Shown in pieces: positions 861 to 48,898 of a DNA stretch of 64,000 nucleotides (its first letter is position 1; each line of letters opens with the position of its first letter). Location of the stretch: positions 248,001-312,000 of IMG/VR virus record IMGVR_UViG_3300042564_002819; one strand, 5' to 3'. The position numbers and the translations under genes were made by a program. The notes beneath the pieces were generated by a model. It saw only the letters and a program-made list of their open reading frames with translations. It searched no databases and was not told the origin of the DNA.

Positions 861-1063
861 AATTTAATGAGTTAATTAAAGAATTTTCAATACAGATGAG
901 CAATGAAGAAAAAACATTGCTTGACAAGATATCAAAACCGTGTTATGTTGAGTCATTCTCACAGAGAGAACAATATGTGATTGAAAACTTAATTAAAAAA
1001 AGTTTGCTTTCAAAGGTATATTATAAAGGTAGCACGGTAGTAATTCCAAATGAAAGACCTTGA
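857..1063 (+). CDS. Hypothetical protein
   Basis: ATGA overlap with upstream gene. Confidence 0.7.
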   Translation: MKFNELIKEFSIQMSNEEKTLLDKISKPCYVESFSQREQYVIENLIKKSLLSKVYYKGSTVVIPNERP

Positions 1064-1478
1064 CATAGCTATTCAGGAACTTGAAGACATAATCGACTCT
1101 AAAATGAACAATTTTTCGTTGCCTTATAAAAAGGGCAACAGTGTCAGACTCGGACATATTGTCATAAGAAAAAGCAAAAATCTCGGATATATAGTATTCG
1201 ATACTAAACTAAACAAACCCATAACAACTACTTTTAGTATAACAGGGGCTCTTGCCGTAGCAAAAGCTTCTATTAAAAAGTCTCCAATTTATACTATTAT
1301 GAAATACGATAACATAATAGAAAAAAATTATAATGACAGTCAATTTTATTCTCACATCATACATGGAAACGCCAGCGAGTCTCGCAAAAAAGCAGTAGCT
1401 TCTCGTCTTGAAATATCGAAGACAAAAATCGATGCTGCAAAAAATGCTCTTGATGAGTTCATTATGAAAGATATGTGA
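1050..1478 (+). CDS. Hypothetical protein
   Basis: 142-aa ORF overlapping upstream gene. Confidence 0.7.
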   Translation: MKDLDIAIQELEDIIDSKMNNFSLPYKKGNSVRLGHIVIRKSKNLGYIVFDTKLNKPITTTFSITGALAVAKASIKKSPIYTIMKYDNIIEKNYNDSQFYSHIIHGNASESRKKAVASRLEISKTKIDAAKNALDEFIMKDM

Positions 1479-1510
1479 TAAATAAATTAAACAATTCCAG
1501 GAACCCAACC

Positions 1511-2446
1511 ATGAACATAAGAGAATTTGCTAAACCAGTTACTGCTAAGTCGTTAAACGAAAGCCTTGCTGCTCGATTCGGACAAAAGATTAATTTAGAG
1601 CGTTTTACAATAGAACAGCTTCAAGATGCACGTAATAGATTGCGTACAAAACTAAGTCAAGTAGAAACAAACGAATCGTTTGACGCTGTTCATAATGAAA
1701 CTTATCAAAAATCAAAAATGATGCTTGATGTATTAAATGCTGCTCTTTCCGAAAGAGGACATGTTGAAGAAGACACTTCAACTAAGCGTTTAAGAGAAGG
1801 CGAAGAAGACAAAGCTGAATTGGTAATGTCAGCTAAAGACATGGTTGATCGTCTAACTGGTTGGATGGAAGATGTAGCAGAAATGCAAACAGAATCTATG
1901 CTTGAACTTGCTGACGCAATTCGCGACGAGCTAGGACAAGAATCTTCAGAAGCATTTGTTGGATTGGTAAAGCCTGCACTTGACAGCCTCTACCAAGCTA
2001 TGGAATCAACTCGTACTTCGTTAACTGGCGGTGTAAGTCAGTTGACCGGCGAAGGAACAGCACCAACACCTATGCCAGGTGAAGAACCAGGAATGGATGC
2101 AGATTTAGGTGCAGAAGACGAACTAGATGCAGACCTCGGCGGCGACATTACTCCGGTCAGTTCGGTAGACGACGACTTTGGAGCAGCAGAACCAGCAGCC
2201 GGCGGCGAAGAACCAGCAGATAGAGCAAAGCGTGAGTCAAAAGACTACTCAGCTAAAAAAGCAGCCGCAGGTAAAGACATTGGCAAGCCAGGCAAGCAAT
2301 TTGCAAAGATTGCAAAGAGTGCAGGCGAAAAGTATGGTAGCAAAGAGCGTGGCGAAAAGGTAGCCGGTGCTGTTCTTAAAAAGCTACGCACAAAAGAATC
2401 AGTAAATCCAACTACACTTGCAAACATACTTTCAAAAAAAAAGTAA
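1511..2446 (+). CDS. Acidic coiled-coil protein, possible prohead core/scaffold
   Basis: AGGA SD then ATG 1511 (MNIREFA); TAAATA upstream; E/D-rich helices; ends on an A9G slippery run. Confidence 0.7.
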   Translation: MNIREFAKPVTAKSLNESLAARFGQKINLERFTIEQLQDARNRLRTKLSQVETNESFDAVHNETYQKSKMMLDVLNAALSERGHVEEDTSTKRLREGEEDKAELVMSAKDMVDRLTGWMEDVAEMQTESMLELADAIRDELGQESSEAFVGLVKPALDSLYQAMESTRTSLTGGVSQLTGEGTAPTPMPGEEPGMDADLGAEDELDADLGGDITPVSSVDDDFGAAEPAAGGEEPADRAKRESKDYSAKKAAAGKDIGKPGKQFAKIAKSAGEKYGSKERGEKVAGAVLKKLRTKESVNPTTLANILSKKK

Positions 2447-2754
2447 CTGAAGAAGTTAACGCTAATAAACTGTACCAACTTCTAGTTTTATTAAAAAATA
2501 AAGGAAACTTCAACGTTTCCTTTAATCAATTAAATCAATATATGAGTAACATGGGTGACGAAGGTTTCACTTATGATATCTTTCAACAAGCATACAACAG
2601 TGACCCTAAAATTCAAAATATAGTGGCTGACTTTAATAAAAACTCTGTTAAAATAAAAACAGGCGATGAAAATAATTTATCGAGAAAACCTACATCAGGA
2701 AAAAATACTGTTTCGGCAATGGCAAAAAGAGCAACTGACTTAGGTGATTTGTAA
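2443..2754 (+). CDS. Hypothetical ORF, likely -1 frameshift extension of the preceding gene (alternative start ATG 2542)
   Basis: -1 frame is open from A AAA AAG (2437-2443) for 33 codons before the first ATG. Confidence 0.55.
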   Translation, partial: VTEEVNANKLYQLLVLLKNKGNFNVSFNQLNQYMSNMGDEGFTYDIFQQAYNSDPKIQNIVADFNKNSVKIKTGDENNLSRKPTSGKNTVSAMAKRATDLGDL

Positions 2755-2769
2755 AAATTGTAATTAGGC

Positions 2770-3450
2770 ATGACATTAATAAAAAAGAAATATGAATATA
2801 AAAAACTTTTAAGAGTTGAAGTAAATGGCAAAAGAAGATATGACTGGGGTGGCAGCATCCCAGTTCCTAGTGTTACAACAATTCTGTCAGAGACAAAAGA
2901 TCAAACACACTTGATAGAATGGCGAAAGCGTGTTGGCGAAGAAAAAGCAAAAGAAATAACAGTTGAAGCTGCTGGTGTAGGTACTCGTATGCACAAGTAT
3001 CTAGAAGATTATATCGACACCGGCAGTTGGCCAGTGCCTGGCAGCAATCCTTACGCTCAAAAAGCACATGCAATGGCAACTCGGATCAAAGTACATGCAC
3101 TCGACGATGTAAACGAAATTTGGGGATCAGAAGTTTCTTTGTACATGCCAGATCTTTATGCAGGAACAACAGATTTAGTTGGACTGTACAAAGGCAATCC
3201 GTCAATCATGGATTTTAAACAGAGCAACAAAGTTAAAAAGAAAGAGTGGATTGAAGATTATTATCTTCAAATGACTGCGTATGCACTTGCTCATAATGAA
3301 ATACACGGTACTAACATTCGTGAAGGACACATTTTTATGTGTACTAGAGACGAACAGTATTTGCAATTTGATCTGTGGCCCGATGAATTTGACGAATGGT
3401 CTCACAAATGGTGGGACCGAGTACACGACTACTATTCCAAGTACGCATAA
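2770..3450 (+). CDS. PD-(D/E)XK exonuclease
   Basis: PSVTTIL, GTRMH, E...YAGTTDL...IMDFKQS, YYLQMTAYA motifs. Confidence 0.85.
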   Translation: MTLIKKKYEYKKLLRVEVNGKRRYDWGGSIPVPSVTTILSETKDQTHLIEWRKRVGEEKAKEITVEAAGVGTRMHKYLEDYIDTGSWPVPGSNPYAQKAHAMATRIKVHALDDVNEIWGSEVSLYMPDLYAGTTDLVGLYKGNPSIMDFKQSNKVKKKEWIEDYYLQMTAYALAHNEIHGTNIREGHIFMCTRDEQYLQFDLWPDEFDEWSHKWWDRVHDYYSKYA

Positions 3451-3476
3451 ATATATAAAAGCGTAGGAGTAGTTAA

Positions 3477-5093
3477 ATGGCTGTAGTTCAAATCTCGAGA
3501 ATTCAACATCGTAGAGGTAGAAAACTTACCAACACCGGAATGCCTCAATTAGCGTCGGGCGAAATTGGATGGGCAATTGATACACAAGAATTGTTTATTG
3601 GAAACGGGTCAGTAAGCGAAGGTGCTCCGTATGTTGGTAATACAAAAGTTCTTACCGAACACGACAACATTTTTACTCTTGCTGATCAGTATACTTATAA
3701 ACCAGACGACAATCTTTGGGGATCTCAAATACCTGTAAGTAGACCCTTACAAGAAAGATTAGACGAGTTTGTATCTGTATTTTCTTTTGGAGCAACAGCT
3801 GACGGAACTGACCAAACAACAGCTATAGAAAATGCAGTAAACAATCTTTATAAAAACAGCGATAACGCTAGTAGAGTAATACTTTGGTTTCCTGCCGGTA
3901 CCTATTTAATTTCCAGCACAATACAATTGCCTCCTTATGTAACACTTAGAGGTGCAGGAAAAGGTAAAACAAAAATCATTACATCAAACTGTGATGCGTT
4001 TACAACAATACACTATAATCCTAACAATGTGTTAGAAACAATCACAAACTTAAATCAAGCAAGATACATTGAAATGTCGGATATGACTATATCAATACCG
4101 TCAACATCTTACAAAGGTATAACAGTTGCATCCGGTGTTAACAGTGTGTTTAAAAATTTACGTTTTGAAGGTGCATGGGACTTTGGTGCTACAAATACTT
4201 CACACAGTGCAATAGTATTAACAGCAACAGCAACTGATATTACATCATCATTCAATCTTTTTGAAAATATTGAGATTGACAGTTTTAATTATGCAGTATA
4301 TAGTGATGATGATGTTAAACATAACGTCTTCTCTAATTGCATTTTTTATAAGATTAAACAAGCAATTGCATTTGGACTAAACAGCGTCATTGGTAGTAAT
4401 AACCAAATGACCGGTCCATTGTTTAACACTTTTGAAAAATGTATATTTGATCGCGTAGATCAAGAAGGCATCTATGTAAAAAATGGTGAATACAATGTAA
4501 GCAGAGAAAACAAATATCTAAACGTAGGTAATAACAGTGCAGGTACTCCAATACCGTTTTACTCTAATGTACGTTTTGAAACAAACACAAACATTTCTGA
4601 TAACGACTATTTTGAAAGAACTGCATCACTTACACCAAACGAAGATGGCAACCCTTCTGTACTAAACTTTGATACACGTTATGTTCCTGAAATACACGGA
4701 AGAACTAACGTTAGACTACCTTATGCTAATGAAATTACAATAGGATATATGCCTGGTAAAGTACCAAGCGGTGATCCACAGGAAATTCTAAAGTTTCCTG
4801 TTATCAATAGCGGAACTATATTTGTTGATTATGTTTACACAGAAACTAACAATAATATAGTAAGAGAAGGTGTGCTTGAAATAGTATGTAACTTGGACAC
4901 AGAAGAAGTTACAGTAAATGACGATTACACCTACTTAGGATCATCAACTGATTACAGCACTGCATTAACTTTTTATGCAGAGTTTGCTGACTTAGGTGGC
5001 GATCTAAACAAAGATACTATTAGAATTAATTGTATTAACACAATTGCTTCAGCAGACGACAAGTTTTATTATACAATAAGAGTAAAATCGTAA
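3477..5093 (+). CDS. Tail fibre/spike-like beta-helix protein
   Basis: N-terminal IQHRRG...LASGEIGWAIDTQELFIGNG module; FGATADGTDQT...FPAGTY pectate-lyase-like start. Confidence 0.7.
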   Translation: MAVVQISRIQHRRGRKLTNTGMPQLASGEIGWAIDTQELFIGNGSVSEGAPYVGNTKVLTEHDNIFTLADQYTYKPDDNLWGSQIPVSRPLQERLDEFVSVFSFGATADGTDQTTAIENAVNNLYKNSDNASRVILWFPAGTYLISSTIQLPPYVTLRGAGKGKTKIITSNCDAFTTIHYNPNNVLETITNLNQARYIEMSDMTISIPSTSYKGITVASGVNSVFKNLRFEGAWDFGATNTSHSAIVLTATATDITSSFNLFENIEIDSFNYAVYSDDDVKHNVFSNCIFYKIKQAIAFGLNSVIGSNNQMTGPLFNTFEKCIFDRVDQEGIYVKNGEYNVSRENKYLNVGNNSAGTPIPFYSNVRFETNTNISDNDYFERTASLTPNEDGNPSVLNFDTRYVPEIHGRTNVRLPYANEITIGYMPGKVPSGDPQEILKFPVINSGTIFVDYVYTETNNNIVREGVLEIVCNLDTEEVTVNDDYTYLGSSTDYSTALTFYAEFADLGGDLNKDTIRINCINTIASADDKFYYTIRVKS

Positions 5094-5096
5094 CAC

Positions 5097-5522
5097 ATGT
5101 TTGATAAAAGATTTGAGGACAGGCTGCGAGCCTGGGCTGATTTTAGAAATCAGCTAGAGTTTTCTCACAACCCAATACAAGAGGTCATAGATTTTTATAA
5201 TCGTGCTCCTTTAGTTAACATACAGGTTGATCCATATGACCAGACCAGTTGGCTAGATCCTTGGTCACTTTTAAGAGAAAATAATTATTGTAATTTTGCA
5301 TTAATTTTAGGAATTGCCTATACTTTGCAATTAACCACTCGCTTTTCTGAGGCTCAATTTGAGATACATATCTGTACCGATAAGGAAAAGTCAGAGATAA
5401 AATATCTACTTTTTGTTGACAATTGTGTTATTGGATACAATAGAAATTGTGCAATAAAAGTTGTAGATTTACCACCATCTCTGCAATTCGAAAAATCTTA
5501 TCGGCTACCTGCCCTACAATAA
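5097..5522 (+). CDS. Hypothetical protein
   Basis: 141-aa ORF with tight spacing. Confidence 0.7.
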   Translation: MFDKRFEDRLRAWADFRNQLEFSHNPIQEVIDFYNRAPLVNIQVDPYDQTSWLDPWSLLRENNYCNFALILGIAYTLQLTTRFSEAQFEIHICTDKEKSEIKYLLFVDNCVIGYNRNCAIKVVDLPPSLQFEKSYRLPALQ

Positions 5523-30384: not shown

Positions 30385-30729
30385 TTATTTTTTTTTATCT
30401 TCTCTGCCGGTGCTGTTAAAAACTTGGCTACGGCTTTGATACTTGTTAATCAATTCGTCGAGTTCGTCTTTTTTGTCATCTGGAAGCGAATCTATGTGTT
30501 GTCGATATTCTAAAACCATTGTTAGCTTACTGTTTAAACGAATCATGTCGTTATCTAACATACGTACACGATCCACTAGTTTAATCAGCGTCCCCATTGT
30601 TTCACCAATCACAGGATCAATTTCTTCAGTTACCCATTTCCATATAAAGAAAACAAAGTAGCCCATTCCCATTGCTGCAATGATCGGAAATCCAAAGTCT
30701 TTAATAGCCTGTGCAATATCAAATTCCAT
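30385..30729 (-). CDS. Single-TM coiled-coil protein
   Basis: FGFPIIAA TM; LVDRVRMLDNDMIRL. Confidence 0.75.
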   Translation of the reverse strand: MEFDIAQAIKDFGFPIIAAMGMGYFVFFIWKWVTEEIDPVIGETMGTLIKLVDRVRMLDNDMIRLNSKLTMVLEYRQHIDSLPDDKKDELDELINKYQSRSQVFNSTGREDKKK

Positions 30730-40751: not shown

Positions 40752-40838
40752 GGTCGGTGGCCCGGATGGTAAGGGGATGGACTGCAACTCCATAGCACTG
40801 CACGACAGTAATCAGTTCGATTCTGATACCGACCTCCA
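40752..40838 (+). tRNA. tRNA-Cys(GCA) with long variable arm
   Basis: GGTCGGT/ACCGACC, U73, encoded CCA; ATGGA-CTGCAAC-TCCAT. Confidence 0.88.
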
Positions 40839-40843
40839 CAATT

Positions 40844-40920
40844 GGTGCCGTAACTCAGTTGGTCAGAGTGCATCGCTCATAACGATGAAGTCGGTGGTTC
40901 AAATCCACCCGGCACCACCA
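40844..40920 (+). tRNA. tRNA(CAT), elongator Met (Ile2 not excluded)
   Basis: GGTGCCG/CGGCACC; CATCG-CTCATAA-CGATG; CCA. Confidence 0.9.
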
Positions 40921-40925
40921 AAATT

Positions 40926-41002
40926 GGGACATTGGACTTCTTGGCGAAGGTCGCCGCCCTTTCAAGGCGGAGAAACGGGTTCGAAACCCGTATGTCCTAC
41001 CA
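40926..41002 (+). tRNA. tRNA-Glu(TTC)
   Basis: CCGCC-CTTTCAA-GGCGG; TTCGAAA T-loop; CCA. Confidence 0.9.
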
Positions 41003-41043
41003 AAATAGATCAAGCCTAGTCGATCTCGAAAATCACTAGGCCC

Positions 41044-41109
41044 GCTCCTGAGGATCAAGCCATCGGAAGGTTCGAGACTTCCTTTGCAGGGTCGTCACCT
41101 GCCAGGAGT
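41044..41109 (+). ncRNA. Candidate T-loop-containing junction RNA
   Basis: GCTCCTG/CAGGAGT closing GGAAG-GTTCGAGA-CTTCC and GCAGG-GTCGTCA-CCTGC. Confidence 0.4.
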
Positions 41110-41118
41110 AACATACAT

Positions 41119-41203
41119 GGGAGAGACGCCTCAAGGTGAGGCAGTGGATTGTAAATCCATCGCGGCAACGCACGGACGGGTTCGATTCCCTCCTCTCCCA
41201 CCA
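41119..41203 (+). tRNA. tRNA-Tyr(GTA)
   Basis: GGGAGAG/CTCTCCC; GTGGA-TTGTAAA-TCCAT; long variable arm; CCA. Confidence 0.9.
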
Positions 41204-41209
41204 AAATTA

Positions 41210-41285
41210 GGGTCTCTGGTATAGCTGGTGCGTACGGCTGCCTGAAGAGCAGTAGGACACGGTTCGATTCCGTGGGGACCCGCCA
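41210..41285 (+). tRNA. tRNA-Phe(GAA)
   Basis: GGGTCTC/GGGACCC; GCTGC-CTGAAGA-GCAGT; CCA. Confidence 0.88.
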
Positions 41286-41320
41286 AGAATTATACTACCA
41301 TAAACACGAAAGAAAATAAA

Positions 41321-41467
41321 ATGAAACTTGATCCGGAAGAAAGAATCTTCTTGACTGAAGAAGAATTGAAGCGTATACATGATGCTTGTGCTAATCCACC
41401 GGAACCAACAGACTATGTAAGACGCTATATTAACGCATATAGGAGAAAAAATGAAACGAAAACGTAA
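41321..41467 (+). CDS. 48-aa protein resembling the C-terminal part of DUF1778/TacA antitoxins
   Basis: Not in the ORF track; ERIFLTEEELKRIHDACANPPEPTDYVRR. Confidence 0.55.
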   Translation: MKLDPEERIFLTEEELKRIHDACANPPEPTDYVRRYINAYRRKNETKT

Positions 41468-41494
41468 CGCAGAAGATTATGACAAACGCAACAT

Positions 41495-41570
41495 GGACCG
41501 GTAGCTGAGGTGGTTTTAGCACCCGACTTTTAATCGGAGTACGTGGGTTCGAGTCCCACCCGGTCCACCA
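41495..41570 (+). tRNA. tRNA-Lys(TTT)
   Basis: GGACCGG/CCGGTCC; CCGA-CTTTTAA-TCGG; CCA. Confidence 0.9.
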
Positions 41571-41684
41571 TAGTTTTGATGATACACTGACGCCGCGTGG
41601 TTACGGCTATACAACTAGGCTTATCGCAACCTAATAACCATAGAGGGTTGAGTCGAGGTTGAGCAGTGTATCTTTTAAACTATG
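41569..41684 (+). ncRNA. Long hairpin element with ACACT/AGTGT basal stem
   Basis: CATAGTTT...GATACACTG / CAGTGTATC...AAACTATG between tRNA-Lys and tRNA-Ile. Confidence 0.45.
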
Positions 41685-41689
41685 AATAT

Positions 41690-41765
41690 TGTTCCATAGC
41701 ACAACTGGTTAGTGCAGGCGACTGATAATCGTCAGATCTGAGTTCGAGTCTCGGTGGAACAACCA
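41690..41765 (+). tRNA. tRNA-Ile(GAT)
   Basis: TGTTCCA/TGGAACA; GGCGA-CTGATAA-TCGTC; CCA. Confidence 0.9.
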
Positions 41766-41786
41766 AAATTAGTAGGAAGACAGCCA

Positions 41787-41966
41787 GTGGAAGAACAGGA
41801 ATATTACGCACCGTGGGAATGGCAGCCGATCGAATTCATGCCTAACGGATGTAATGATGTTGTTGTAAGAGACCGTGAAGGCAACACTCGAGAATTGTGT
41901 TCATGCGATTACTGGTGGTTGTCAGCAGAAGATAAAAAGATTTACACATCTTTTAGATTTGTGTAA
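41787..41966 (+). CDS. Hypothetical protein
   Basis: AGGA SD then GTG; WQPIE motif; the track start lies inside tRNA-Ile. Confidence 0.55.
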   Translation: MEEQEYYAPWEWQPIEFMPNGCNDVVVRDREGNTRELCSCDYWWLSAEDKKIYTSFRFV

Positions 41967-41978
41967 TTTTAACATAAT

Positions 41979-42053
41979 GCCGTGCTTGGTGTAAGGGTAG
42001 CATACCGCACTGTGACTGCGTTGGAATAGGTTCAAATCCTATACACGGTACCA
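41979..42053 (+). tRNA. tRNA-His(GTG), alphaproteobacterial type
   Basis: CGCA-CTGTGAC-TGCG; G1-U72, A73, T rather than G at -1. Confidence 0.85.
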
Positions 42054-42065
42054 ATACAAATTTAA

Positions 42066-42659
42066 TTATTGTACTTTTTTACTTAATACTCTGTATATGT
42101 CGTTATAGTTATTTTTATATTTCGACTCATTGACAATTTCGTAGTTATATAATTGGTTTAATACCTTTAAACCATGTATTCCATCTTTAGTATCTAATTG
42201 ATTGCATGTACCTATTACATGATCTGACAATGACAAACTATAATCAAATAGTTCTTCCCAAGTATTATTATATGGATACAGTTCTATAATTACCATTTGA
42301 TGTTTTTTAGTGTAATTAAAAAAATCACATTTCATAGCTGTGATGTTTGGGTAGTTGTGCATTGTGTTAAACAGTGCTAGGGTGTTTTGTTTTTTTAAAA
42401 ACTTATCCGCACAAGTCATCTTATGAAGATCACGCAACTCTTCGTATGTTTCAATATAGTGAAACGTATCTATTGCAGTAACATGTGTCTTTGGAAATGA
42501 ACGACAAATTGCCGCAGCAACTCTGCCGCCAAATGTGCCAGCACACAAAACGTCACGTATATCATTGTTTGATATATGATCGCAAATATTAACTATTTCC
42601 TCGTATCCAGTCCAATTTGGAAAGTCCATTAGTATATTATATTTGCTTTTATATGACAT
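42066..42659 (-). CDS. SAM-dependent methyltransferase-like protein
   Basis: DVLCAGTFGGR...VTAIDTF Rossmann-like motifs; TATAAATA and AGGA upstream on the minus strand. Confidence 0.55.
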   Translation of the reverse strand: MSYKSKYNILMDFPNWTGYEEIVNICDHISNNDIRDVLCAGTFGGRVAAAICRSFPKTHVTAIDTFHYIETYEELRDLHKMTCADKFLKKQNTLALFNTMHNYPNITAMKCDFFNYTKKHQMVIIELYPYNNTWEELFDYSLSLSDHVIGTCNQLDTKDGIHGLKVLNQLYNYEIVNESKYKNNYNDIYRVLSKKVQ

Positions 42660-42715
42660 GTGATATTCCTTGTATAACTAAAACGTATTTATAAAACTTA
42701 AAATAAGAGAGATAA

Positions 42716-43147
42716 ATGATGAGCAAATATGACACATATAACAGATTAACCGAACCTGTAAAATCATTTGATGAACTACGCGGCCGTGCGTTAACTCGTG
42801 TTGAAAAAATCGGAAACGACGAATTGCGTTTCTACTTAACAGATGAACATTATGTTCGTATGCATCACAATCAAGATTGTTGCGAATCAGTAACAATCGA
42901 GGATATTGTTGGTGATTTAGACGATTTAGTCGGAACTCCGTTGCTGGTTGTCGAAGAACGTGTTTCTCGTAACGATGGCGGTACAGATGAACTGTATTGT
43001 GATTCATACACTTGGACATACTACAGTTTTCGCACTATCAAAGGTAGTGTAGATATTCGTTGGTATGGAAGTAGCAATGGATACTATTCAGAAGGTGTTG
43101 ACATTGACATTGTAACACCCGATGCAGAAAATCAAGTAGAAATCTAA
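42716..43147 (+). CDS. Conserved-looking phage hypothetical protein
   Basis: HNQDCCESV, WTYY, WYGSSNGYYSE. Confidence 0.75.
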   Translation: MMSKYDTYNRLTEPVKSFDELRGRALTRVEKIGNDELRFYLTDEHYVRMHHNQDCCESVTIEDIVGDLDDLVGTPLLVVEERVSRNDGGTDELYCDSYTWTYYSFRTIKGSVDIRWYGSSNGYYSEGVDIDIVTPDAENQVEI

Positions 43148-43216
43148 GGCCAAAGGCTTAGATCACATCAAGTTAAACTGTATTATTTCTATATACTGTC
43201 ATTTTATAAATATTTT

Positions 43217-43729
43217 ATGAGGGTATTACTAATAATAACGCTATTATTATCTCTTTCTGCTTGTGCTGATTTTAAGAAAATTCTTCGACCCGAACCTACA
43301 CCAGAACCGATAAAAACAGCAATAGAAAAAGTAGGTTGGAACGAGCATCAAGACCGCAGAGAAATAAGAGAATTTACTGGTGTAGATCCAGTAAGTACAC
43401 AATGGTGTGCTGCGTTTGTAAACGCAGTTCTTGAAGAAAATGGGTTACCTGGATCGGAGTTCTATAACGAAAATCCACTGTTAGCAAGAAGTTTTCTGTC
43501 CTGGGGTGTAGAGGTAGAAGAGCCCGAATACGGCGATATTGTAGTATTTGCTCGAGGCAATGAAGCTTGGAAGGGTCATGTTGGGTTTTATGTAACTTCG
43601 ACATATTTAGAAGGTCAAAAACACTACTTAGTTCTTGGCGGAAATCAAAACAACAGTGTCACATACAAAGCATATCCTACTCGTAGACTGCTTTCTGTAA
43701 GACGACTTACAACAGAAGATACTGAATAA
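43217..43729 (+). CDS. CHAP/NlpC-like cell-wall peptidase lipoprotein (TIGR02594-like)
   Basis: Lipobox LSAC; WCAAFVN, ARSFLSWG, GDIVVF, GHVGFY, LGGNQ. Confidence 0.85.
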   Translation: MRVLLIITLLLSLSACADFKKILRPEPTPEPIKTAIEKVGWNEHQDRREIREFTGVDPVSTQWCAAFVNAVLEENGLPGSEFYNENPLLARSFLSWGVEVEEPEYGDIVVFARGNEAWKGHVGFYVTSTYLEGQKHYLVLGGNQNNSVTYKAYPTRRLLSVRRLTTEDTE

Positions 43730-43742
43730 AATTTAGTTTAAT

Positions 43743-43819
43743 GCTCTCGTAGCTCAATGGATTAGAGCGTCGGTCTACGAAACCGAAGGTTAGAGGTTCG
43801 AGTCCTCTCGAGAGTGCCA
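43743..43819 (+). tRNA. tRNA-Arg(ACG)
   Basis: GCTCTCG/CGAGAGT; TCGGT-CTACGAA-ACCGA; CCA. Confidence 0.93.
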
Positions 43820-43828
43820 AAATACTAG

Positions 43829-43857
43829 TTGACACTGGCATAGACAAGTGTTATTGT
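43829..43857 (+). promoter_or_regulatory. Sigma70-type promoter
   Basis: TTGACA-N17-TATTGT with extended -10. Confidence 0.7.
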
Positions 43858-43882
43858 GAGTGCAACAAGAAAGGAAATACAC

Positions 43883-44179
43883 ATGAATAAAATTCTAATT
43901 TCTGCACTTTTTGCCTTTGTTTCTACTGCTGCTACTGCAAAAACAGTTTATTACCCCGAAGCTGCATGTAACGAAATTCTCAGCAGCGAATACAGCACTG
44001 GTGGGGGTGATTCCAGCTGGGAGATGTACGAAATTCTTTGCCGTGACGCTAATGGAAAATACACTACCTTTGTTACCAGCTGGATGAGTGTTGCAGGGTT
44101 CTTTGGTATGGGTCGAGTTGCATACGAAGAAACGATTGACCTTGTACCCTACAACGGTACTACATTGAAGGCTGAATAA
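43883..44179 (+). CDS. Secreted hypothetical protein
   Basis: AAGGA SD; signal peptide. Confidence 0.7.
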   Translation: MNKILISALFAFVSTAATAKTVYYPEAACNEILSSEYSTGGGDSSWEMYEILCRDANGKYTTFVTSWMSVAGFFGMGRVAYEETIDLVPYNGTTLKAE

Positions 44180-44180
44180 A

Positions 44181-44624
44181 ATGAAAATCGAATATCGTAA
44201 AGGCAACATGTTTGAAACTGACATCCTGCATATTGCACATGGCTGCAATGCACAAGGTGTTATGGGATCTGGCGTTGCTAAGATTGTAAAAGAAGATTAC
44301 TTTGATGCATATCGTTTCTACGCAGAACAGTACGACGAGCATGGACTTAAATTAGGAGATGTGCAGTTTGTTCCTGCAAACGGCAAAGTAATCATCAATG
44401 CTGTTACGCAGAATCTGTACGGCAAAGACGGTCGTCGTTTTGTTAATTACGAAGCAGTTGCAGAGTGCATGAGAACTATTAATAGTGTACTTAAGCAAAG
44501 TGGCGAAACTCATGTTGCTATGCCGCAAATTGGTGCCGGCCTTGGTGGCGGCGATTGGCGTGTGATTGAAGCAATCATTGAAAGCGAAATGACAGACATT
44601 CAACCTGTGGTGTATGTACTGTGA
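44181..44624 (+). CDS. Macro domain protein (ADP-ribose processing)
   Basis: KGNMF, HGCNAQGVMGSGVA, MPQIGAGLGGGDW. Confidence 0.9.
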   Translation: MKIEYRKGNMFETDILHIAHGCNAQGVMGSGVAKIVKEDYFDAYRFYAEQYDEHGLKLGDVQFVPANGKVIINAVTQNLYGKDGRRFVNYEAVAECMRTINSVLKQSGETHVAMPQIGAGLGGGDWRVIEAIIESEMTDIQPVVYVL

Positions 44625-44767
44625 CAACACCCTTAGCAGATCAGAAGATATTCTCACTCAATGATCTCATTGAAATGGGTCTTATTACACGTAAACAGTT
44701 AGAAGATCACATCCGATACATGGAAGCAAAACAGTTAGTAAAAGAACTGTTTCCAGGAATGTTTTAA
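44621..44767 (+). CDS. Small hypothetical protein (48 aa)
   Basis: GTGA overlap with the macro gene; not in track. Confidence 0.5.
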   Translation: MTTPLADQKIFSLNDLIEMGLITRKQLEDHIRYMEAKQLVKELFPGMF

Positions 44768-44795
44768 AAATAAAGAATAGGTAGCCGCGACTACC

Positions 44796-44927
44796 TTGGC
44801 TAGGAGACTATTTGCATTGTGCATCGTGGGGCCTTTGTGTAGTAGACTGTTTCGTCTAACGGAGAGGACGCCGGTGGAGATCCGGAGATACAGGTTCGAG
44901 TCCTGTAGCAGTTTTGCTCCTAGCCAA
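44796..44927 (+). ncRNA. tRNA-like RNA embedded in an 11-bp outer stem
   Basis: TTGGCTAGGAG/CTCCTAGCCAA encloses a cloverleaf at 44845-44913 with a non-canonical anticodon loop and no CCA. Confidence 0.55.
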
Positions 44928-44936
44928 AATAATTTA

Positions 44937-45012
44937 GCCTTCGTAGCTCAACTGGAAGAGCAAGGGATTTCTACTCCCTAGGTTGTGGGTTCGACTCCTG
45001 CCGGGGGCACCA
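44937..45012 (+). tRNA. tRNA-Arg(TCT)
   Basis: GCCTTCG/CGGGGGC; AGGGA-TTTCTAC-TCCCT; CCA. Confidence 0.92.
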
Positions 45013-45021
45013 AAAAAGCTG

Positions 45022-45050
45022 TTGACACAGACTTGGCACTATGCTACAAC
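45022..45050 (+). promoter_or_regulatory. Sigma70-type promoter
   Basis: TTGACA-N17-TACAAC with extended -10. Confidence 0.65.
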
Positions 45051-45067
45051 AAGTTATTGAATAACAC

Positions 45068-45472
45068 ATGAGGAACACTGAGATGAAGACTGCTTACAAG
45101 AACCGTGACGGCGAATGGGTTGTGGCCGAGCAGATCAAGATGAGCCGGTATGACCTTGAAGGTTCGGTAGATTCGATTAAGGCTGCACTGGACGAGGTTC
45201 GCGACCGTGCTACCGCAATGGGTATGGTGGGTGAAGGCACTGTTGACATCAGCCTGAACCGCGGCTTCTACTCGGACGACTACGAAATAGAAGTGGAATA
45301 CTCCTTCACTCGGTATGAATACCCTGTGGAGATGGAGCGGCGTTTGGAGCGTGAGGCCAAGGATAAGGCTGCGGCTGCTGCCAAGCGTAAGGAAGCCGCC
45401 CAGAAGCGGAAACTCAAGAACGATCCTGAGTATGTGGAGTTTGAACGGCTCCGGGCCAAGTTTGGTGGTTGA
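45068..45472 (+). CDS. Hypothetical protein (GC-richer)
   Basis: ORF after promoter; charged C-terminal helix. Confidence 0.7.
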   Translation: MRNTEMKTAYKNRDGEWVVAEQIKMSRYDLEGSVDSIKAALDEVRDRATAMGMVGEGTVDISLNRGFYSDDYEIEVEYSFTRYEYPVEMERRLEREAKDKAAAAAKRKEAAQKRKLKNDPEYVEFERLRAKFGG

Positions 45473-45497
45473 CAACACTCTCCTGCTGTGCTATAAC
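45469..45497 (+). promoter_or_regulatory. Sigma70-type promoter
   Basis: TTGACA-N17-TATAAC with extended -10. Confidence 0.75.
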
Positions 45498-45528
45498 AAC
45501 AGCATAGGGCAACACGAGGAGAAATCAA

Positions 45529-45876
45529 ATGCCTTGTAGAGTCAACGACGAAGACTGGAAACCGCGTAAAGAAACCCGCCACGGGATGGATATCGAATCT
45601 TTCGAAGCTACACTTTGCGGCGTCTTCACTGCTGCAGAGGAAGGCGCCTTTGCGCCTACGGTTGTTGGCGGAGTTGATGGCTTGCTGGATGTGATCGACT
45701 GGAAAGAAGCCGGAGTGAAACGCAAGACCGTTGAAGCATGGTGGAAGCGGCATAAGGCAGAAGATGCTGCCCGCCTTGCTCGCGAATCTGCTGAACGGCG
45801 TAAGGCTGAACTCAAGCGGATTGCGATCGGCAAACTCACTGCAGAAGAACTGGAAGTGTTGGGGATCAAACTCTAA
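45529..45876 (+). CDS. Hypothetical protein
   Basis: GAGGAG SD; MPC start, WW..H...D..R, KLT.EE..VLG. Confidence 0.75.
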   Translation: MPCRVNDEDWKPRKETRHGMDIESFEATLCGVFTAAEEGAFAPTVVGGVDGLLDVIDWKEAGVKRKTVEAWWKRHKAEDAARLARESAERRKAELKRIAIGKLTAEELEVLGIKL

Positions 45877-45886
45877 CACTTTCTGG

Positions 45887-45915
45887 TTGACATCCTACCT
45901 ACACCGTGCTATGTA
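45887..45915 (+). promoter_or_regulatory. Sigma70-type promoter
   Basis: TTGACA-N17-TATGTA with extended -10. Confidence 0.65.
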
Positions 45916-45947
45916 TATTGTATAGGGCAACAAGAGGACAACCACAG

Positions 45948-46199
45948 ATGCCGAATCCTGCTACTGCTCCCCGTGACGAATTGAACGAGTTTACTCGCTC
46001 TGTATGGCTGCTTGGTAACAGCAACTGGGGTAATCACGGTGTACGTCTTCGGAACGGGTTGATTGTCAAACCGATCTACAAGCCCGCAGAAGACGAGACC
46101 AGTGAAGATGCATTCTTCACCGAAGACTATGAATACTGCTGGAACCTGGACGGCACTTCGGTAACCCGCAGGGACTTTGATATGATGGAGATCGTGTGA
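45948..46199 (+). CDS. Hypothetical protein
   Basis: GAGGA SD then ATG 45948. Confidence 0.7.
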   Translation: MPNPATAPRDELNEFTRSVWLLGNSNWGNHGVRLRNGLIVKPIYKPAEDETSEDAFFTEDYEYCWNLDGTSVTRRDFDMMEIV

Positions 46200-46200
46200 T

Positions 46201-46608
46201 ATGATCAGAGACCTATTCGTTCCTGTGGCTGAACTGCTGTTCTGGTTCACCGGCGGAGAACTACTGCTGAATACCTGGTGGTTCTTTGTGTGGGTTGTTG
46301 GTGGTGCGTTCCTTGTAACCTTGCCGCTGTGGTTAGGTATGCGTCTGGCCAGACGTGGTAGTAACCTCAAGTGGATACCTGGCACACTCTTCCTAGTCGG
46401 CTTCTTCCCTGCCTTACTGCTGATCACCAGCCCAGGCATCATCCAAGCCGACTTGATGGAAGAATGCCTACCCGTCCAGACCGTAACAGTGGATACCGCA
46501 CAGGTCAAAGGTATTGAAGTTCGAGTTCGCCAGTGTCGCTTCAAGGCCAACTACTATGACAAAAATTATGGTGAATGGCAAGCCTGGGCGGTTGACCGGC
46601 ACCAATAA
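46201..46608 (+). CDS. Membrane protein
   Basis: GGAG SD; two to three hydrophobic helices. Confidence 0.7.
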   Translation: MIRDLFVPVAELLFWFTGGELLLNTWWFFVWVVGGAFLVTLPLWLGMRLARRGSNLKWIPGTLFLVGFFPALLLITSPGIIQADLMEECLPVQTVTVDTAQVKGIEVRVRQCRFKANYYDKNYGEWQAWAVDRHQ

Positions 46609-46624
46609 CTGTATTATAAGCTGC

Positions 46625-46880
46625 ATAAGGAGAGACCGGCAACTTGTGTAGTGCATGTAGTGACGACTTGCGGATAACAGGTGGGATCGTGACATGTTGT
46701 AAATCTTTATGTAAGGGGTCGACACTTTATATAGAGAGAACGCTGCATACGCTGTGGGACCTCGGCGTATCATTAAGGTGATCAAATCACGCAGGGGTAA
46801 AAGCCCTAATGAGGGGTCCTAGGAATTAAAGGAAATACTGTGAGATATAGAAAGTTTTACGACGACTTCTAGGCTATAAC
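46625..46880 (+). ncRNA. Candidate structured ncRNA or long 5' leader
   Basis: Gap of about 285 nt after TTGACC-N17-TATAAG with many nested helices. Confidence 0.45.
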
Positions 46881-46893
46881 CTAGGAGAATCAA

Positions 46894-47100
46894 ATGGCAA
46901 AATCACCTGTTTACGGCAGAGGCCGTAATCGTAAACATAGAGGGCACCGCGGCCCTGTTCACGCTGCGGCTGCTAACATCAATATGCGTGGCAAAAAAAG
47001 CAAACCTGACCACTGCTGGTGCTGTATTTGTATTGACATGCGTGAAGATATCTTGTATCGTATACACAAGAAGGAGATGAGAGATGAAAGAGACACGTAA
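46894..47100 (+). CDS. Small basic Cys-cluster protein
   Basis: AGGAG SD; R/K-rich N-terminus; HCWCCIC. Confidence 0.65.
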   Translation: MAKSPVYGRGRNRKHRGHRGPVHAAAANINMRGKKSKPDHCWCCICIDMREDILYRIHKKEMRDERDT

Positions 47101-47608
47101 GTATCTAGTATTTTTAGACATTGACGGCGTTTTTACTAGCTCTCGTGTTCACTTTGCACACGCTGCTGCTTATGAAATGTGGCACAGATTTGATCCTGTA
47201 GCAGTTGATTTTATGAACAAGATTCATGACAGATATCCTGTGGAGTTTGTGATCATGAGTACTTGGAAGGACAACCTTCGCAGTGACGATAACAACGTAA
47301 AACACTGGGTTCATGCTGCGTTTGGCAACAGTGGCTTTCGTGGGCAACTTGCTACACCTTGGAAAACAGATCCTGACAACGTCATCTGGCAGCGTAAAGG
47401 TGCAAATGATCGTGCCTACGAAGTAAAAGAATATTTAGAACTATACGCAACAGATATAAAAGATTACATTTTGTTTGATGATAATCGCTATCAATTCAAA
47501 GAAGTGCTAGGCGTTAATCGCCTAGTTCATACAGATCACGAAAATGGTCTGTTATACAAGCATATGCTAAATGCTCATAGTTTGATGGGACAGTGGCACG
47601 AGCGGTGA
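47084..47608 (+). CDS. HAD phosphatase of the Swiss-army-knife RNA-repair type
   Basis: VFLDIDGV, STW, YILFDD, GL. Confidence 0.8.
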   Translation: MKETRKYLVFLDIDGVFTSSRVHFAHAAAYEMWHRFDPVAVDFMNKIHDRYPVEFVIMSTWKDNLRSDDNNVKHWVHAAFGNSGFRGQLATPWKTDPDNVIWQRKGANDRAYEVKEYLELYATDIKDYILFDDNRYQFKEVLGVNRLVHTDHENGLLYKHMLNAHSLMGQWHER

Positions 47609-47640
47609 CATCGCTCGGAATAATAACAAAGGAAACAGAG

Positions 47641-47850
47641 ATGACTAAAGAACAAGTTTTAAAATCGCTACCCACGTTTAAATTGCTGGCATGGGGAGAA
47701 ACCGCAGAAACCAGCGGCAATGGAAAATATGTGCATTTTGATGCAAAAGAATCTAGTACACGTATCTTTACTATTGAAGCAATTCTTGCAGAACTAGATA
47801 AGCGTGACGACAATCCTAACCGAGATTCTAGAAAAAAGAAGAAAAAATGA
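47641..47850 (+). CDS. Hypothetical protein
   Basis: AAGGA SD then ATG 47641. Confidence 0.6.
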   Translation: MTKEQVLKSLPTFKLLAWGETAETSGNGKYVHFDAKESSTRIFTIEAILAELDKRDDNPNRDSRKKKKK

Positions 47851-47933
47851 TTAAGTTGCATATTGCTAATTTGGTTAATATTTTGTTATCCAAATTGCAA
47901 GAGATATTGTATAATAGATTAATAAATTAAAGT

Positions 47934-48506
47934 ATGTGTAAGTTAGTTTTTGTTTATAGTTCTATGAATTCCGGTAAAAGCCTAGCTGTTCTTACCAAAA
48001 ATTATATGTTAAAAGAAAAAGGTTTTAAGACTGTGCTCATGAAGCCGGCAGTTGATACTAGGACTGCGGCAACTGTGGCTACACGCTTAGGCTTAGAAGA
48101 GCCCTGTGTTGTACTAGGAACAACTGATTTGCCTAGTCATACTATACTAAAATCAGCACACGACAAGCCTGATTTTATTATTGTTGACGAAGCACAGTTT
48201 TTAACAAGCGAACAAGTTTGGGACCTAGCTGGCTTAGTCGACAACTGGGGCATAAACGTGTATTGCTATGGTCTACGACTTAACTGGCAAGGAGAGTTTT
48301 TTACAGGATCGGAAGCACTGATGAAAATTGCTGATGTGCTAGAACCAATCGAAAACTTCTGTCAAATAAATAAAGGAGCACTAGCATTCTTTCATATTAA
48401 AAAAGCAGGTGGCGATAATCCTGTAGAAGTTGGAATGGAAGACATGTATGACACTGCGTCTAGAAAAGCCTGGAAGCAGTGGTATGACACAAAAAGGCCT
48501 CTGTAG
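47934..48506 (+). CDS. tdk: Thymidine kinase
   Basis: YSSMNSGKS, KPAVDTR, VDEAQFL, CYGLR. Confidence 0.93.
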   Translation: MCKLVFVYSSMNSGKSLAVLTKNYMLKEKGFKTVLMKPAVDTRTAATVATRLGLEEPCVVLGTTDLPSHTILKSAHDKPDFIIVDEAQFLTSEQVWDLAGLVDNWGINVYCYGLRLNWQGEFFTGSEALMKIADVLEPIENFCQINKGALAFFHIKKAGGDNPVEVGMEDMYDTASRKAWKQWYDTKRPL

Positions 48507-48572
48507 CTCAATGGATAGAGCAGCAGACTTCGAATCTGTAGGTTGGGCGTTCGAGTCGCTCCAGGGGTACCA
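48497..48572 (+). tRNA. tRNA-Arg(TCG)
   Basis: GCCTCTG/CAGGGGT; GCAGA-CTTCGAA-TCTGT; CCA; overlaps the tdk stop. Confidence 0.9.
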
Positions 48573-48634
48573 AAATAACACTTGATCTCTTACTTTGCAT
48601 AGTGTAAGCTGTAAGTATAGTAAAGGAGAATCAA

Positions 48635-48814
48635 ATGTGGAAACTTTATATTATGGAATCTGAACGCGGTTGGGGTCAACGAGTTGACGAAATACTAAAG
48701 TTCGACACGTATGAAGAGGCCGATAAATACAAAAAAGAATTTAACAGTAAAAACAATCTTCCTGAAGTGCCTGATTGGTACATGTATGCAGATGGACCTG
48801 TTAAAGTAGATTAA
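48635..48814 (+). CDS. Small hypothetical protein (59 aa)
   Basis: AAGGAG SD; MESERGWGQR...VPDWY; not in track. Confidence 0.7.
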   Translation: MWKLYIMESERGWGQRVDEILKFDTYEEADKYKKEFNSKNNLPEVPDWYMYADGPVKVD

Positions 48815-48898
48815 GTCGCTGTGGTGTAATGGTAGCCACGACAGCTTGAGGTGCTGTTGCCGCAAGGCGTGGGAGTTCGAATCTCCCCAGCGACACCA
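48815..48898 (+). tRNA. tRNA-Leu(GAG)
   Basis: GTCGCTG/CAGCGAC; ACAGC-TTGAGGT-GCTGT; long variable arm; CCA. Confidence 0.92.

What the first reader, a model, noticed from the sequence alone, without database searches (positions are those of the whole stretch)
2432..2754. Probable programmed -1 frameshift extending a putative head protein
Seen: the 1511-2446 gene ends TCA AAA AAA AAG TAA (A9G). The -1 frame is open from there (VTEEVNANKLYQLL...) for 33 codons with no ATG/GTG/TTG before joining ORF 2542-2754, which has no SD. Hairpins follow at about 2465-2492 and 2499-2524. Known: A_AAA_AAG is the strongest bacterial -1 shift heptamer, and A9 runs also permit transcriptional slippage. Inference: short and long forms are made in a fixed ratio.
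Basis: partly seen in the sequence, partly recalled or inferred. Interest (0 to 1): 0.6.

Follow-up and report, generated by a model that had tools for sequence, protein, structure and literature searches.

The report
Conserved A9G frameshift site in phage
A run of nine A's at the end of a gene in an uncultured lake jumbo phage is a conserved signal that lets some protein copies continue in the -1 frame and gain a 103-residue winged-helix-like domain; it is a well-supported but classical type of recoding that current gene callers miss.

Summary
Gene 1511-2446 ends TCA AAA AAA AAG TAA. The -1 frame is open from 2443 to 2754, with no ATG/GTG/TTG before 2542.

Comparative data support recoding:
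- In 61 distinct related viral contigs (extension identity as low as 25%), the homologous gene always ends on A9-G (55), A10 (5) or A8-G (1).
- The extension is always in the -1 frame, and both other frames are always closed.
- No start codon lies upstream of the run; 59 of 61 have none in the first six codons.
- The 33 codons before ATG 2542 evolve like coding sequence. They encode helix 1, strand 1 and most of helix 2 of a winged-helix-like fold.
- Independent assemblies confirm A9.
- More distant relatives keep the same gene order but give the domain its own ATG.

Ribosomal -1 frameshifting and RNA-polymerase slippage (A9 to A10) give the same protein and cannot be told apart here, because no RNA data exist. 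I put about 0.9 on recoding, split about 0.5 ribosomal and 0.35 to 0.4 transcriptional. The function is unknown. This is a new member of a known kind.

The parts
1511..2446 (+). Zero-frame gene 'N' (311 aa plus TAA). It has an N-terminal helical region, a long helical hairpin (residues 89-179), an acidic disordered stretch (183-257) and a basic helical tail ending LSKKK.
   Evidence: homologues; AlphaFold model; weak hit to phrog_14154.
2434..2443 (+). Slippery tract A9-G. The in-phase heptamer A_AAA_AAG is 2437-2443. Zero-frame codons are TCA AAA AAA AAG.
   Evidence: Invariant block. Among 61 distinct loci: 55 A9G, 5 A10, 1 A8G, always in the same phase. The A of the preceding codon is kept in 60 of 61 loci through TCA, CCA or GGA. 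Contigs from other runs show no indel.
2444..2446 (+). Zero-frame stop TAA directly after the slippery tract.
   Evidence: The stop is immediately adjacent in 51 of 61 distinct loci and within about 4 codons in the rest. The first extension codon is mostly GTA and the second always starts with A in those loci although its amino acid varies, so the stop itself appears to be selected.
2443..2754 (+). -1 frame extension 'E' (103 codons plus TAA 2752-2754). It has a winged-helix-like fold over residues about 4-75, an acidic linker and a conserved C-terminal MAKRAxDL helix. The fusion N-E would be 414 aa.
   Evidence: conservation; fold.
2443..2541 (+). The 33 start-less codons between the slip site and ATG 2542. 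They code for helix 1, strand 1 and most of helix 2 of the domain.
   Evidence: Codon-position differences are 0.50/0.36/0.61 here and 0.42/0.32/0.57 after codon 34. E3 and L14 are conserved in 60 of 61 loci. pLDDT is about 87 for residues 11-30.
2542..2754 (+). The ORF as a gene caller sees it (70 aa from ATG 2542; public collections hold it from ATG 2551). This is a truncated reading of E.
   Evidence: Met34 is Leu in 4 of 61 homologues.
2499..2524 (+). It is probably incidental and lies within coding sequence (KGNFNVSF).
   Evidence: It is shared only with the nearest relative L003, and RNAalifold finds no conserved pair. On the minus strand it resembles a terminator.
41495..41570 (+). Phage-encoded tRNA-Lys (anticodon UUU), the tRNA that reads both AAA and AAG. 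No tRNA-Lys(CUU) is encoded. Its relevance to the shift is an inference.

Best explanation
This is a programmed -1 recoding site. Most expression of gene 1511-2446 ends at TAA 2444 and gives a 311-aa protein (N). A fraction of expression events shifts to the -1 frame on the A9G tract and continues to 2754. That gives a 414-aa fusion (N-E) with a C-terminal winged-helix-like domain that has no start codon of its own.

Shown here:
- the tract, its phase and the frame relationship are conserved in 61 of 61 distinct homologous loci;
- the 33 start-less codons are under protein-coding constraint and are part of the fold;
- the A-run length is real.

Inferred:
- that the fusion protein is actually made;
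- its proportion;
- the step at which the shift happens.

I commit to ribosomal -1 slippage of tRNA-Lys on A_AAA_AAG, helped by the adjacent stop codon, as the main route (about 0.5). RNA-polymerase slippage on the A9 run (A9 to A10 in the mRNA) is a nearly equal alternative or contributor (about 0.35 to 0.4). Both routes give the identical protein ...LSKKK-VTEEV.... The function of N and N-E is unknown. My best guess is that N is an abundant helical/acidic assembly or nucleic-acid-associated protein, and that a minority of copies carry a winged-helix DNA- or protein-docking module. The stated confidence is for recoding as such.
For: The slip tract is invariant within an alignment that has 61% mean identity. 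Among 61 distinct loci, 55 have A9G, 5 have A10 and 1 has A8G, all in the same codon phase.

All 61 loci have stops in both other frames within 33 codons, while the extension frame is open. There is no ATG/GTG/TTG upstream of the run in the extension frame in any locus, and only 2 of 61 have one in the first 6 codons.

The codon-position substitution pattern of the linker equals that of the rest of the domain. The AlphaFold model places helix 1, strand 1 and helix 2 upstream of ATG 2542. Structural hits are nearly all winged-helix domains and span model residues 1-75.

Distant relatives with the same gene order encode the same domain with its own ATG abutting the upstream stop, and the domain's N-terminus coincides with the slip site. 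One contig has an A11 run that fuses both parts in frame. Independent contigs confirm A9.

Specific to the ribosomal route:
- the heptamer phase is kept even in the A8G variant;
- G after the run is kept in 56 of 61 loci although the overlapping codon varies (GTA, GTC, GTT, GCT, GAC);
- the adjacent stop is kept at the nucleotide level in 51 of 61 loci;
- the phage encodes only tRNA-Lys(UUU);
- A_AAA_AAG is a top -1 heptamer in E. coli (PMC4066793).
Against: There is no direct evidence that the fusion protein exists. No RNA run holds the sequence and there are no proteomic data.

No conserved downstream structure or upstream Shine-Dalgarno-like stimulator was found.

The genome carries 28 in-phase A_AAA_AAG heptamers, exactly the number expected (28.7). 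The bare heptamer is therefore not avoided and may not be very shifty in this host.

The three A's upstream of the heptamer are conserved at synonymous sites. The two-tRNA model does not need that.

Met34 is conserved in 57 of 61 loci, so a minor internally initiated product cannot be excluded.
Confidence: 0.88

Rival explanations
1. Programmed transcriptional slippage. The host RNA polymerase stutters on the T9 template and adds one A in a fraction of transcripts, so standard translation of the A10 mRNA gives N-E. No phage RNA polymerase was found. The ribosome does not shift.
For: The run length of 9 or more is kept in 60 of 61 loci. This includes the wobble A of the preceding codon, which is kept in three different codons (TCA, CCA, GGA). 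The two upstream Lys codons are always AAA, although AAG makes up 32% of Lys codons and TCA only 16% of Ser codons in the window. Nine A/T is the length at which bacterial RNA polymerase slips efficiently, and it is the length used in Thermus dnaX (PMC5009743). There is no conserved ribosomal stimulator. In-phase A_AAA_AAG heptamers elsewhere in the genome are not avoided. A second gene in the same genome is interrupted at an A10 run that is A11 in a relative. Searches for PF00562 and PF00940 in the genome were negative.
Against: The codon phase is invariant, which this model does not need. An A8G variant keeps the heptamer. The terminal G and the adjacent stop codon are conserved at the nucleotide level. 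A9 can equally be read as a three-tRNA (E, P and A site) slippery motif. No RNA data are available.
Confidence: 0.37
2. There are two ordinary genes. The downstream ORF is translated on its own from ATG 2542 (or 2551) as a 67 to 70-aa protein, as gene callers annotate it, and the upstream open stretch is fortuitous.
For: Met34 is conserved in 57 of 61 loci. Public collections hold the product as 65-74 aa proteins. In distant relatives the domain is a separate gene.
Against: The 33 upstream codons show coding-type constraint and conserved residues from codon 1. They form about a third of the fold. There is no Shine-Dalgarno core or promoter-like site before 2542. In 4 of 61 loci that Met is Leu. 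In the distant relatives the separate gene starts at the position equivalent to the slip site, not at Met34.
Confidence: 0.05
3. The frameshift is a homopolymer sequencing or assembly error, or a recent inactivating mutation in a gene that is really one ORF.
For: Homopolymers are error-prone. One related contig (L127) has A11 and is in frame. Another A-run frameshift in this genome does look like such an indel.
Against: The same out-of-frame arrangement recurs in 61 distinct sequences from many metagenomes, with compensating variants (A9G, A10-TAA, A8G) that all keep the -1 requirement. Three independent runs give A9 with no indel.
Confidence: 0.02

Closest known systems
IS3/IS911-type orfA-orfB transframe fusion (-1 ribosomal frameshift at A_AAA_AAG)
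   Same: It uses the same heptamer in the same phase. Two overlapping ORFs are involved, the downstream one lacks its own functional start, and the shift adds a whole domain to a shorter main product.
   Different: This is not a transposase. No conserved downstream stem-loop or pseudoknot and no upstream Shine-Dalgarno-like element were found. The tract is extended to A9, and the zero-frame stop directly abuts it.
dnaX gamma/tau: E. coli (-1 PRF at A_AAA_AAG) and Thermus thermophilus (transcriptional slippage at a run of 9)
   Same: The two dnaX cases show the same two mechanisms that are possible here on an A-rich tract. tRNA-Lys(UUU) weakness on AAG is the stated basis of the E. coli shift. 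Some bacteria have the zero-frame stop directly after the site and make the long form by shifting (PMC5009743).
   Different: In the two classical dnaX cases the shift truncates the protein, whereas here it extends it. E. coli dnaX has strong flanking stimulators, which are absent here.
Phage C-terminally extended structural or assembly proteins made by -1 PRF (lambda G/GT tail chaperone, T7 10A/10B, phage A2 major head protein)
   Same: In each, a phage makes a minor, longer variant of an abundant protein from one mRNA through a -1 shift near the end of the gene.
   Different: The gene family is unrelated and the slippery motif differs. The added module is a winged-helix-like domain, the genomic setting is next to an exonuclease and ribonucleotide reductase, and a role in the virion is not shown.
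Shigella spa13 and mxiE (transcriptional slippage at A/T runs giving C-terminal extensions)
   Same: A homopolymer run near the end of a short ORF gives access to an overlapping frame and produces an extended, functional protein in a set fraction (PMC5009743).
   Different: Those are bacterial type III secretion genes whose mechanism was shown by RNA analysis. Here the mechanism is undetermined.

Membership tests
Programmed -1 ribosomal frameshift cassette | X_XXY_YYZ heptamer in phase with the zero frame | tested here: met
   A_AAA_AAG at 2437-2443. An in-phase A_AAA_AAG or A_AAA_AAA is present in 61 of 61 distinct homologues.
Programmed -1 ribosomal frameshift cassette | Overlapping -1 ORF under coding constraint from the shift site, without its own start | tested here: met
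Programmed -1 ribosomal frameshift cassette | Stimulatory element: a downstream structure 5-9 nt away or an upstream Shine-Dalgarno-like sequence (usual but not obligatory) | tested here: not met
   RNAalifold finds 0 conserved pairs. Individual folds are weak and dissimilar, and there is no Shine-Dalgarno-like block upstream. An adjacent stop codon is conserved in 51 of 61 loci and may substitute for a stimulator.
Programmed -1 ribosomal frameshift cassette | Transframe protein detected | not testable with these tools
   No proteomic data exist, and the phage is uncultured.
Programmed transcriptional slippage site | Homopolymer run of about 9 or more A/T, conserved in length | tested here: met
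   A9 in 55, A10 in 5 and A8 in 1 of 61 loci. The flanking synonymous positions are fixed as A.
Programmed transcriptional slippage site | mRNA population heterogeneous in run length relative to DNA | not testable with these tools
   No run on record as RNA holds the sequence. The runs that were laid are DNA contigs.
Winged-helix domain (extension E) | H1-S1-H2-H3-S2-wing-S3 topology and significant structural match | tested here: inconclusive
   The topology is present in the model (pLDDT 73). Nearly all the best hits are winged-helix domains, but the scores are middling: MCM8 WH Z 6.6 with rmsd 2.9 over 66 residues, and Foldseek E 0.1 to 1. There is no Pfam or PHROG hit.
   The only sequence hit is to phrog_14154 'virion structural protein' at E 1e-13 over a helical/acidic stretch. 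Pfam gives nothing. The fold search returns generic helical hairpins with Z up to 9.6. The neighbouring genes are an exonuclease, a pectate-lyase-like spike and ribonucleotide reductase.

The most novel reading that the evidence does not exclude
The conserved element is the full A9 tract, read by the host RNA polymerase. On this reading a whole lineage of freshwater and marine jumbo phages uses programmed transcriptional slippage. This would be rare or undescribed for dsDNA phages. The slippage turns what is a translationally coupled two-gene pair in their distant relatives into one short protein plus a fixed minority of a fusion protein. Run-length variants (A8, A9, A10, A11) would act as an evolutionary dial for the ratio, and a phage-encoded tRNA-Lys(UUU) might add a ribosomal contribution.
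Probability: 0.35. Interest if true: 0.62.

Novelty: new member of a known kind. Interest (0 to 1): 0.5.

Why it matters
This adds a deeply conserved recoding site outside the usual phage cases (tail chaperones and capsid proteins). It is conserved across at least 61 distinct genomes with domain identity down to 25%. It occurs in a large group of uncultured jumbo phages whose proteins are otherwise unannotated.

It also corrects a systematic annotation error. Public collections hold the extension as 65-92 aa fragments that lack a third of the fold.

The family offers a natural series for asking which features of an A-rich tract serve the ribosome and which serve the polymerase:
- separate genes with their own ATG;
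- the A9G recoded form;
- A10 and A8G variants;
- an A11 in-frame fusion.

Finally, it gives a handle on an unknown protein pair that stays linked to an exonuclease and a tail-spike-like gene.

Tried and rejected
- GenBank phage collection: megablast and tblastn of the region found no relative.
- Pfam and PHROGs on the extension gave nothing. Pfam on N gave only sub-threshold hits.
- Rfam on 2300-2800 gave only chance-level hits.
- Conserved RNA structure after the site: none found.
- Promoter scan: no promoter-like site lies between the stop and ATG 2542. The 2499-2524 hairpin looks like a terminator only on the minus strand, where there is no gene.
- Fold search of N returned generic helical hairpins that say nothing about function. 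The Atlas feature search returned only unnamed viral clusters.
- RNA evidence: no RNA run holds the stretch, so the two mechanisms could not be separated.
- An extension HMM built from 10 sequences did not match the ORFs downstream of the distant N homologues in L032 and L033. Profile comparison then gave only a weak match for L032 (E 1e-3, including the MAxRAxD motif) and none worth citing for L033. The clear cases of a separate gene came from L128 and L130 instead.
- Phage RNA polymerase: searches for PF00562 and PF00940 in the genome were negative. The PF00940 control search matched none of the control genomes, so that negative result is weak.
- Literature searches for this motif or family in phages found nothing specific.
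- I did not build or submit the joined 414-aa fusion sequence, because a -1 join cannot be given by reference. The two parts were searched and folded separately.

Full report
**Setting**

The window is bases 248001-312000 of a 330,024-bp IMG/VR virus record. CheckV rates the record 93% complete, which makes it a jumbo phage. Public runs that hold the stretch are lake-water and river metagenomes, all DNA. The genome has 37% G+C and 33 tRNA genes. No relative was found in the GenBank phage collection.

**Observation**

- The gene from ATG 1511 ends TCA AAA AAA AAG TAA (2432-2446).
- The A run is 2434-2442 and is followed by G 2443.
- The -1 frame from GTA 2443 is open for 103 codons, up to TAA 2752-2754.
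- This frame has no ATG, GTG or TTG before ATG 2542. It also has none in the 21 open codons upstream of the run.
- Contigs assembled independently from three other runs (X5, X6 and X9, the last a strain with 12 substitutions) cross the run without a gap. No insertion or deletion was reported in any of the four runs laid.
- This is the only A9G in the genome.

**Comparative test**

The zero-frame protein retrieved ten homologous viral loci at 50-72% identity. All of them end on the same tract.

An alignment of the -1 frame products then retrieved 80 more loci. After collapsing identical sequences there are 61 distinct loci. Their pairwise identity in the extension is 25% at minimum and 40% at the median.

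In all 61 loci:
- the upstream ORF is the homologue of gene 1511-2446 and the extension lies in its -1 frame;
- 55 have A9 followed by G, 5 have A10 followed by TAA, and 1 has A8 followed by G;
- the codon phase is always xxA AAA AAA AAG or its equivalent;
- the zero-frame stop is immediately adjacent in 51 and within about four codons in the rest;
- both alternative frames are closed within 33 codons of the site while the extension frame is open.

None of the 61 loci has a start codon in the extension frame upstream of the run. Only 2 have one within the first six codons. In 56 the first ATG lies more than 20 codons in.

In the nucleotide alignment the block CTTTC-A9-(G/A)-TAA is invariant, against 61% mean identity overall.

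**The 33 start-less codons are coding**

Pairwise differences at codon positions 1, 2 and 3 are 0.50, 0.36 and 0.61 in the stretch before codon 34. After codon 34 they are 0.42, 0.32 and 0.57 (the ten-sequence set shows the same pattern). Conserved residues begin at once: Val/Ile1, Glu3 (60 of 61) and Leu14 (60 of 61). The Met at codon 34, which corresponds to ATG 2542, is Leu in four sequences.

An AlphaFold model of the extension has mean pLDDT 73, and about 87 for residues 11-70. Its topology is helix 7-19, strand 24-26, helix 27-36, helices 44-53 and 55-60, then strands 61-64 and 68-71.

An exhaustive structural comparison returns almost only winged-helix domains, spanning model residues 1-75. 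Examples are MCM8 WH (Z 6.6, rmsd 2.9 over 66 residues), ESCRT-II, the Wadjet JetABC complex, Stn1, Rok, Cdt1 and SelB. Foldseek agrees, but weakly. The scores are middling, so I call the fold winged-helix-like.

The important point is that a product started at ATG 2542 would lack helix 1, strand 1 and most of helix 2.

**Distant relatives**

A profile search of 1.8 billion representative proteins found 428 relatives of the extension.
- Most are gene-caller fragments of 65-92 aa that begin at whatever start codon comes first inside the domain. The ESM Atlas holds the window's own product only from residue 37.
- A few proteins carry the domain with a Met of their own three or four residues before the position that matches the slip site (P0057, P0076, P0079, P0089).

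In the contigs that encode these proteins (L128 and L130) the gene order matches the window: a roughly 147-aa gene, a clear homologue of N, the domain gene, a PD-(D/E)XK exonuclease, and a pectate-lyase-like protein. The N homologues match at hhalign E 1e-45 and 1e-47. The domain gene starts 2 nt after, or 4 nt overlapping, the stop of the gene before it; in L128 that is an extra 176-aa gene lying between N and the domain gene.

So the two parts are an old linked pair. In the window's clade the second part has lost its own initiation and can be reached only through the A tract. Whether the recoded state is the derived one has not been tested with a tree.

One contig (L127) has CC-A11-T, which makes a single 376-aa in-frame fusion. 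This may be a natural variant or a homopolymer error. Either way it is the only in-frame fusion of N and the extension among the 150 best representatives.

**Mechanism**

Ribosomal -1 slippage on A_AAA_AAG and insertion of one A by RNA polymerase both give ...LSKKK-VTEEV....

Points favouring the ribosome:
- The phase never varies, and the A8G variant keeps the heptamer.
- The G after the run is kept in 56 of 61 loci, although the codon that overlaps it varies (GTA, GTC, GTT, GCT, GAC).
- The adjacent stop is kept at the nucleotide level. In those loci the first extension codon is GTA and the second always starts with A, while its amino acid varies among Thr, Ser, Asn and Ile.
- The phage encodes tRNA-Lys(UUU) and no tRNA-Lys(CUU). 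Weak pairing of that tRNA with AAG is the accepted basis of this heptamer's shiftiness in E. coli (PMC5009743; PMC4066793).

Points favouring the polymerase:
- The three A's upstream of the heptamer are also fixed. The two Lys codons are always AAA although AAG is 32% of Lys codons in the window.
- The preceding codon ends in A in 60 of 61 loci, through TCA (only 16% of Ser codons), CCA or GGA.
- Nine is the run length at which bacterial RNA polymerase slips efficiently, and it is the length used in Thermus dnaX (PMC5009743).
- No conserved stimulatory structure exists. RNAalifold finds no pair, and single-sequence folds are weak and differ from one another.
- The genome holds 28 in-phase A_AAA_AAG heptamers against 28.7 expected, so the bare heptamer is not avoided.
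- No phage RNA polymerase was detected (the second control was uninformative).

An A9G tract is also exactly what simultaneous re-pairing of E-, P- and A-site tRNAs would require, so the extended run does not decide the question. I put recoding at about 0.9, split about 0.5 ribosomal and 0.35 to 0.4 transcriptional; both may contribute.

A weak stem at about 2445-2487 and a 10-bp stem at 2499-2524 fold in the window. The second is shared only with the closest relative and lies 56 nt from the site. Neither is conserved.

**What the proteins are**

N models as follows:
- a helical N-terminal region;
- a confident long helical hairpin (residues 89-179, pLDDT above 90);
- an acidic disordered stretch (183-257);
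- basic helices (262-308).

Structural matches for N are generic. The sequence hits are phrog_14154 'virion structural protein' at E 1e-13 and nothing above threshold in Pfam. The label 'head protein' is therefore not established. The function of N and N-E is unknown.

A minority of N copies carrying a winged-helix docking or DNA-binding module is a reasonable guess, but it is only an inference.

**Verdict**

This is a real, deeply conserved and so far unannotated -1 recoding site of the classical A-rich type. It is a new member of a known kind. Interest is moderate: the signal itself will not surprise a recoding specialist, but its breadth, the missing stimulators, and the natural series of junction states make it a good system for separating ribosomal from polymerase slippage.

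Noticed in passing
G000:C1:192079-192088 (outside the window; L132:2080-2089): A second A-run frame break occurs in the same genome. TC-A10-TT separates a 273-aa ORF (phrog_28018) from a 303-codon open frame in the -1 frame, which has no start for about 30 codons. Relative L134 also has A10. L133 has A11 and a single 579-aa ORF. L135 has no run and is in frame. This looks like a homopolymer indel, or a variable tract possibly rescued by slippage, not a conserved recoding site.
   Followed up: partly
window 2243-2410 (residues 245-300 of gene 1511-2446): A basic module of about 50 aa (KDIGKPGKQF...YGSKERGEKVAGAVLKKLR, DUF3008-like) is an insertion. Most homologues lack it, and L012 carries it at a different place in the same protein. 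It also occurs at 80-94% identity inside many unrelated phage proteins (L013-L046). It behaves like a mobile mini-domain.
   Followed up: partly
L011, L105, L109, L121 (about 45 nt upstream of the real slip site): Some homologues carry a second, in-frame TC-A9-G within a duplicated SKKKLxExSRxLAxxLSKKK motif. A -1 shift there would hit a stop after two codons.
   Followed up: no
L127:3790-3802 (Logan contig of one run): A CC-A11-T run makes the two parts one in-frame 376-aa ORF (P0068). It is either a natural fused variant or a homopolymer assembly error.
   Followed up: partly
L005:3729-4076 and 4945-5292: The extension region, together with its slip site, is present twice and identically in this contig. 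It is either a tandem duplication or an assembly artefact. The near-identical contig L006 shows it once.
   Followed up: no
window 40752-48898: A cluster of 12 tRNA genes, including tRNA-Lys(UUU) at 41495-41570. The whole genome has 33 tRNA genes and no tRNA-Lys(CUU). Two ARAGORN calls have odd anticodon loops (genome 324615 and 329728).
   Followed up: partly
window 30388-30396 (minus strand): A T9 run on the plus strand means that a 124-aa minus-strand ORF ends AAA AAA AAA TAA. No long open frame follows it.
   Followed up: no
window 1050-5093 and loci L127, L128, L130: A gene block is conserved across distant relatives: a roughly 140-aa protein, N, the winged-helix-like domain, a PD-(D/E)XK exonuclease (2770-3450), and a pectate-lyase-like protein with an Mtd_N head (3477-5093).
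   Followed up: partly
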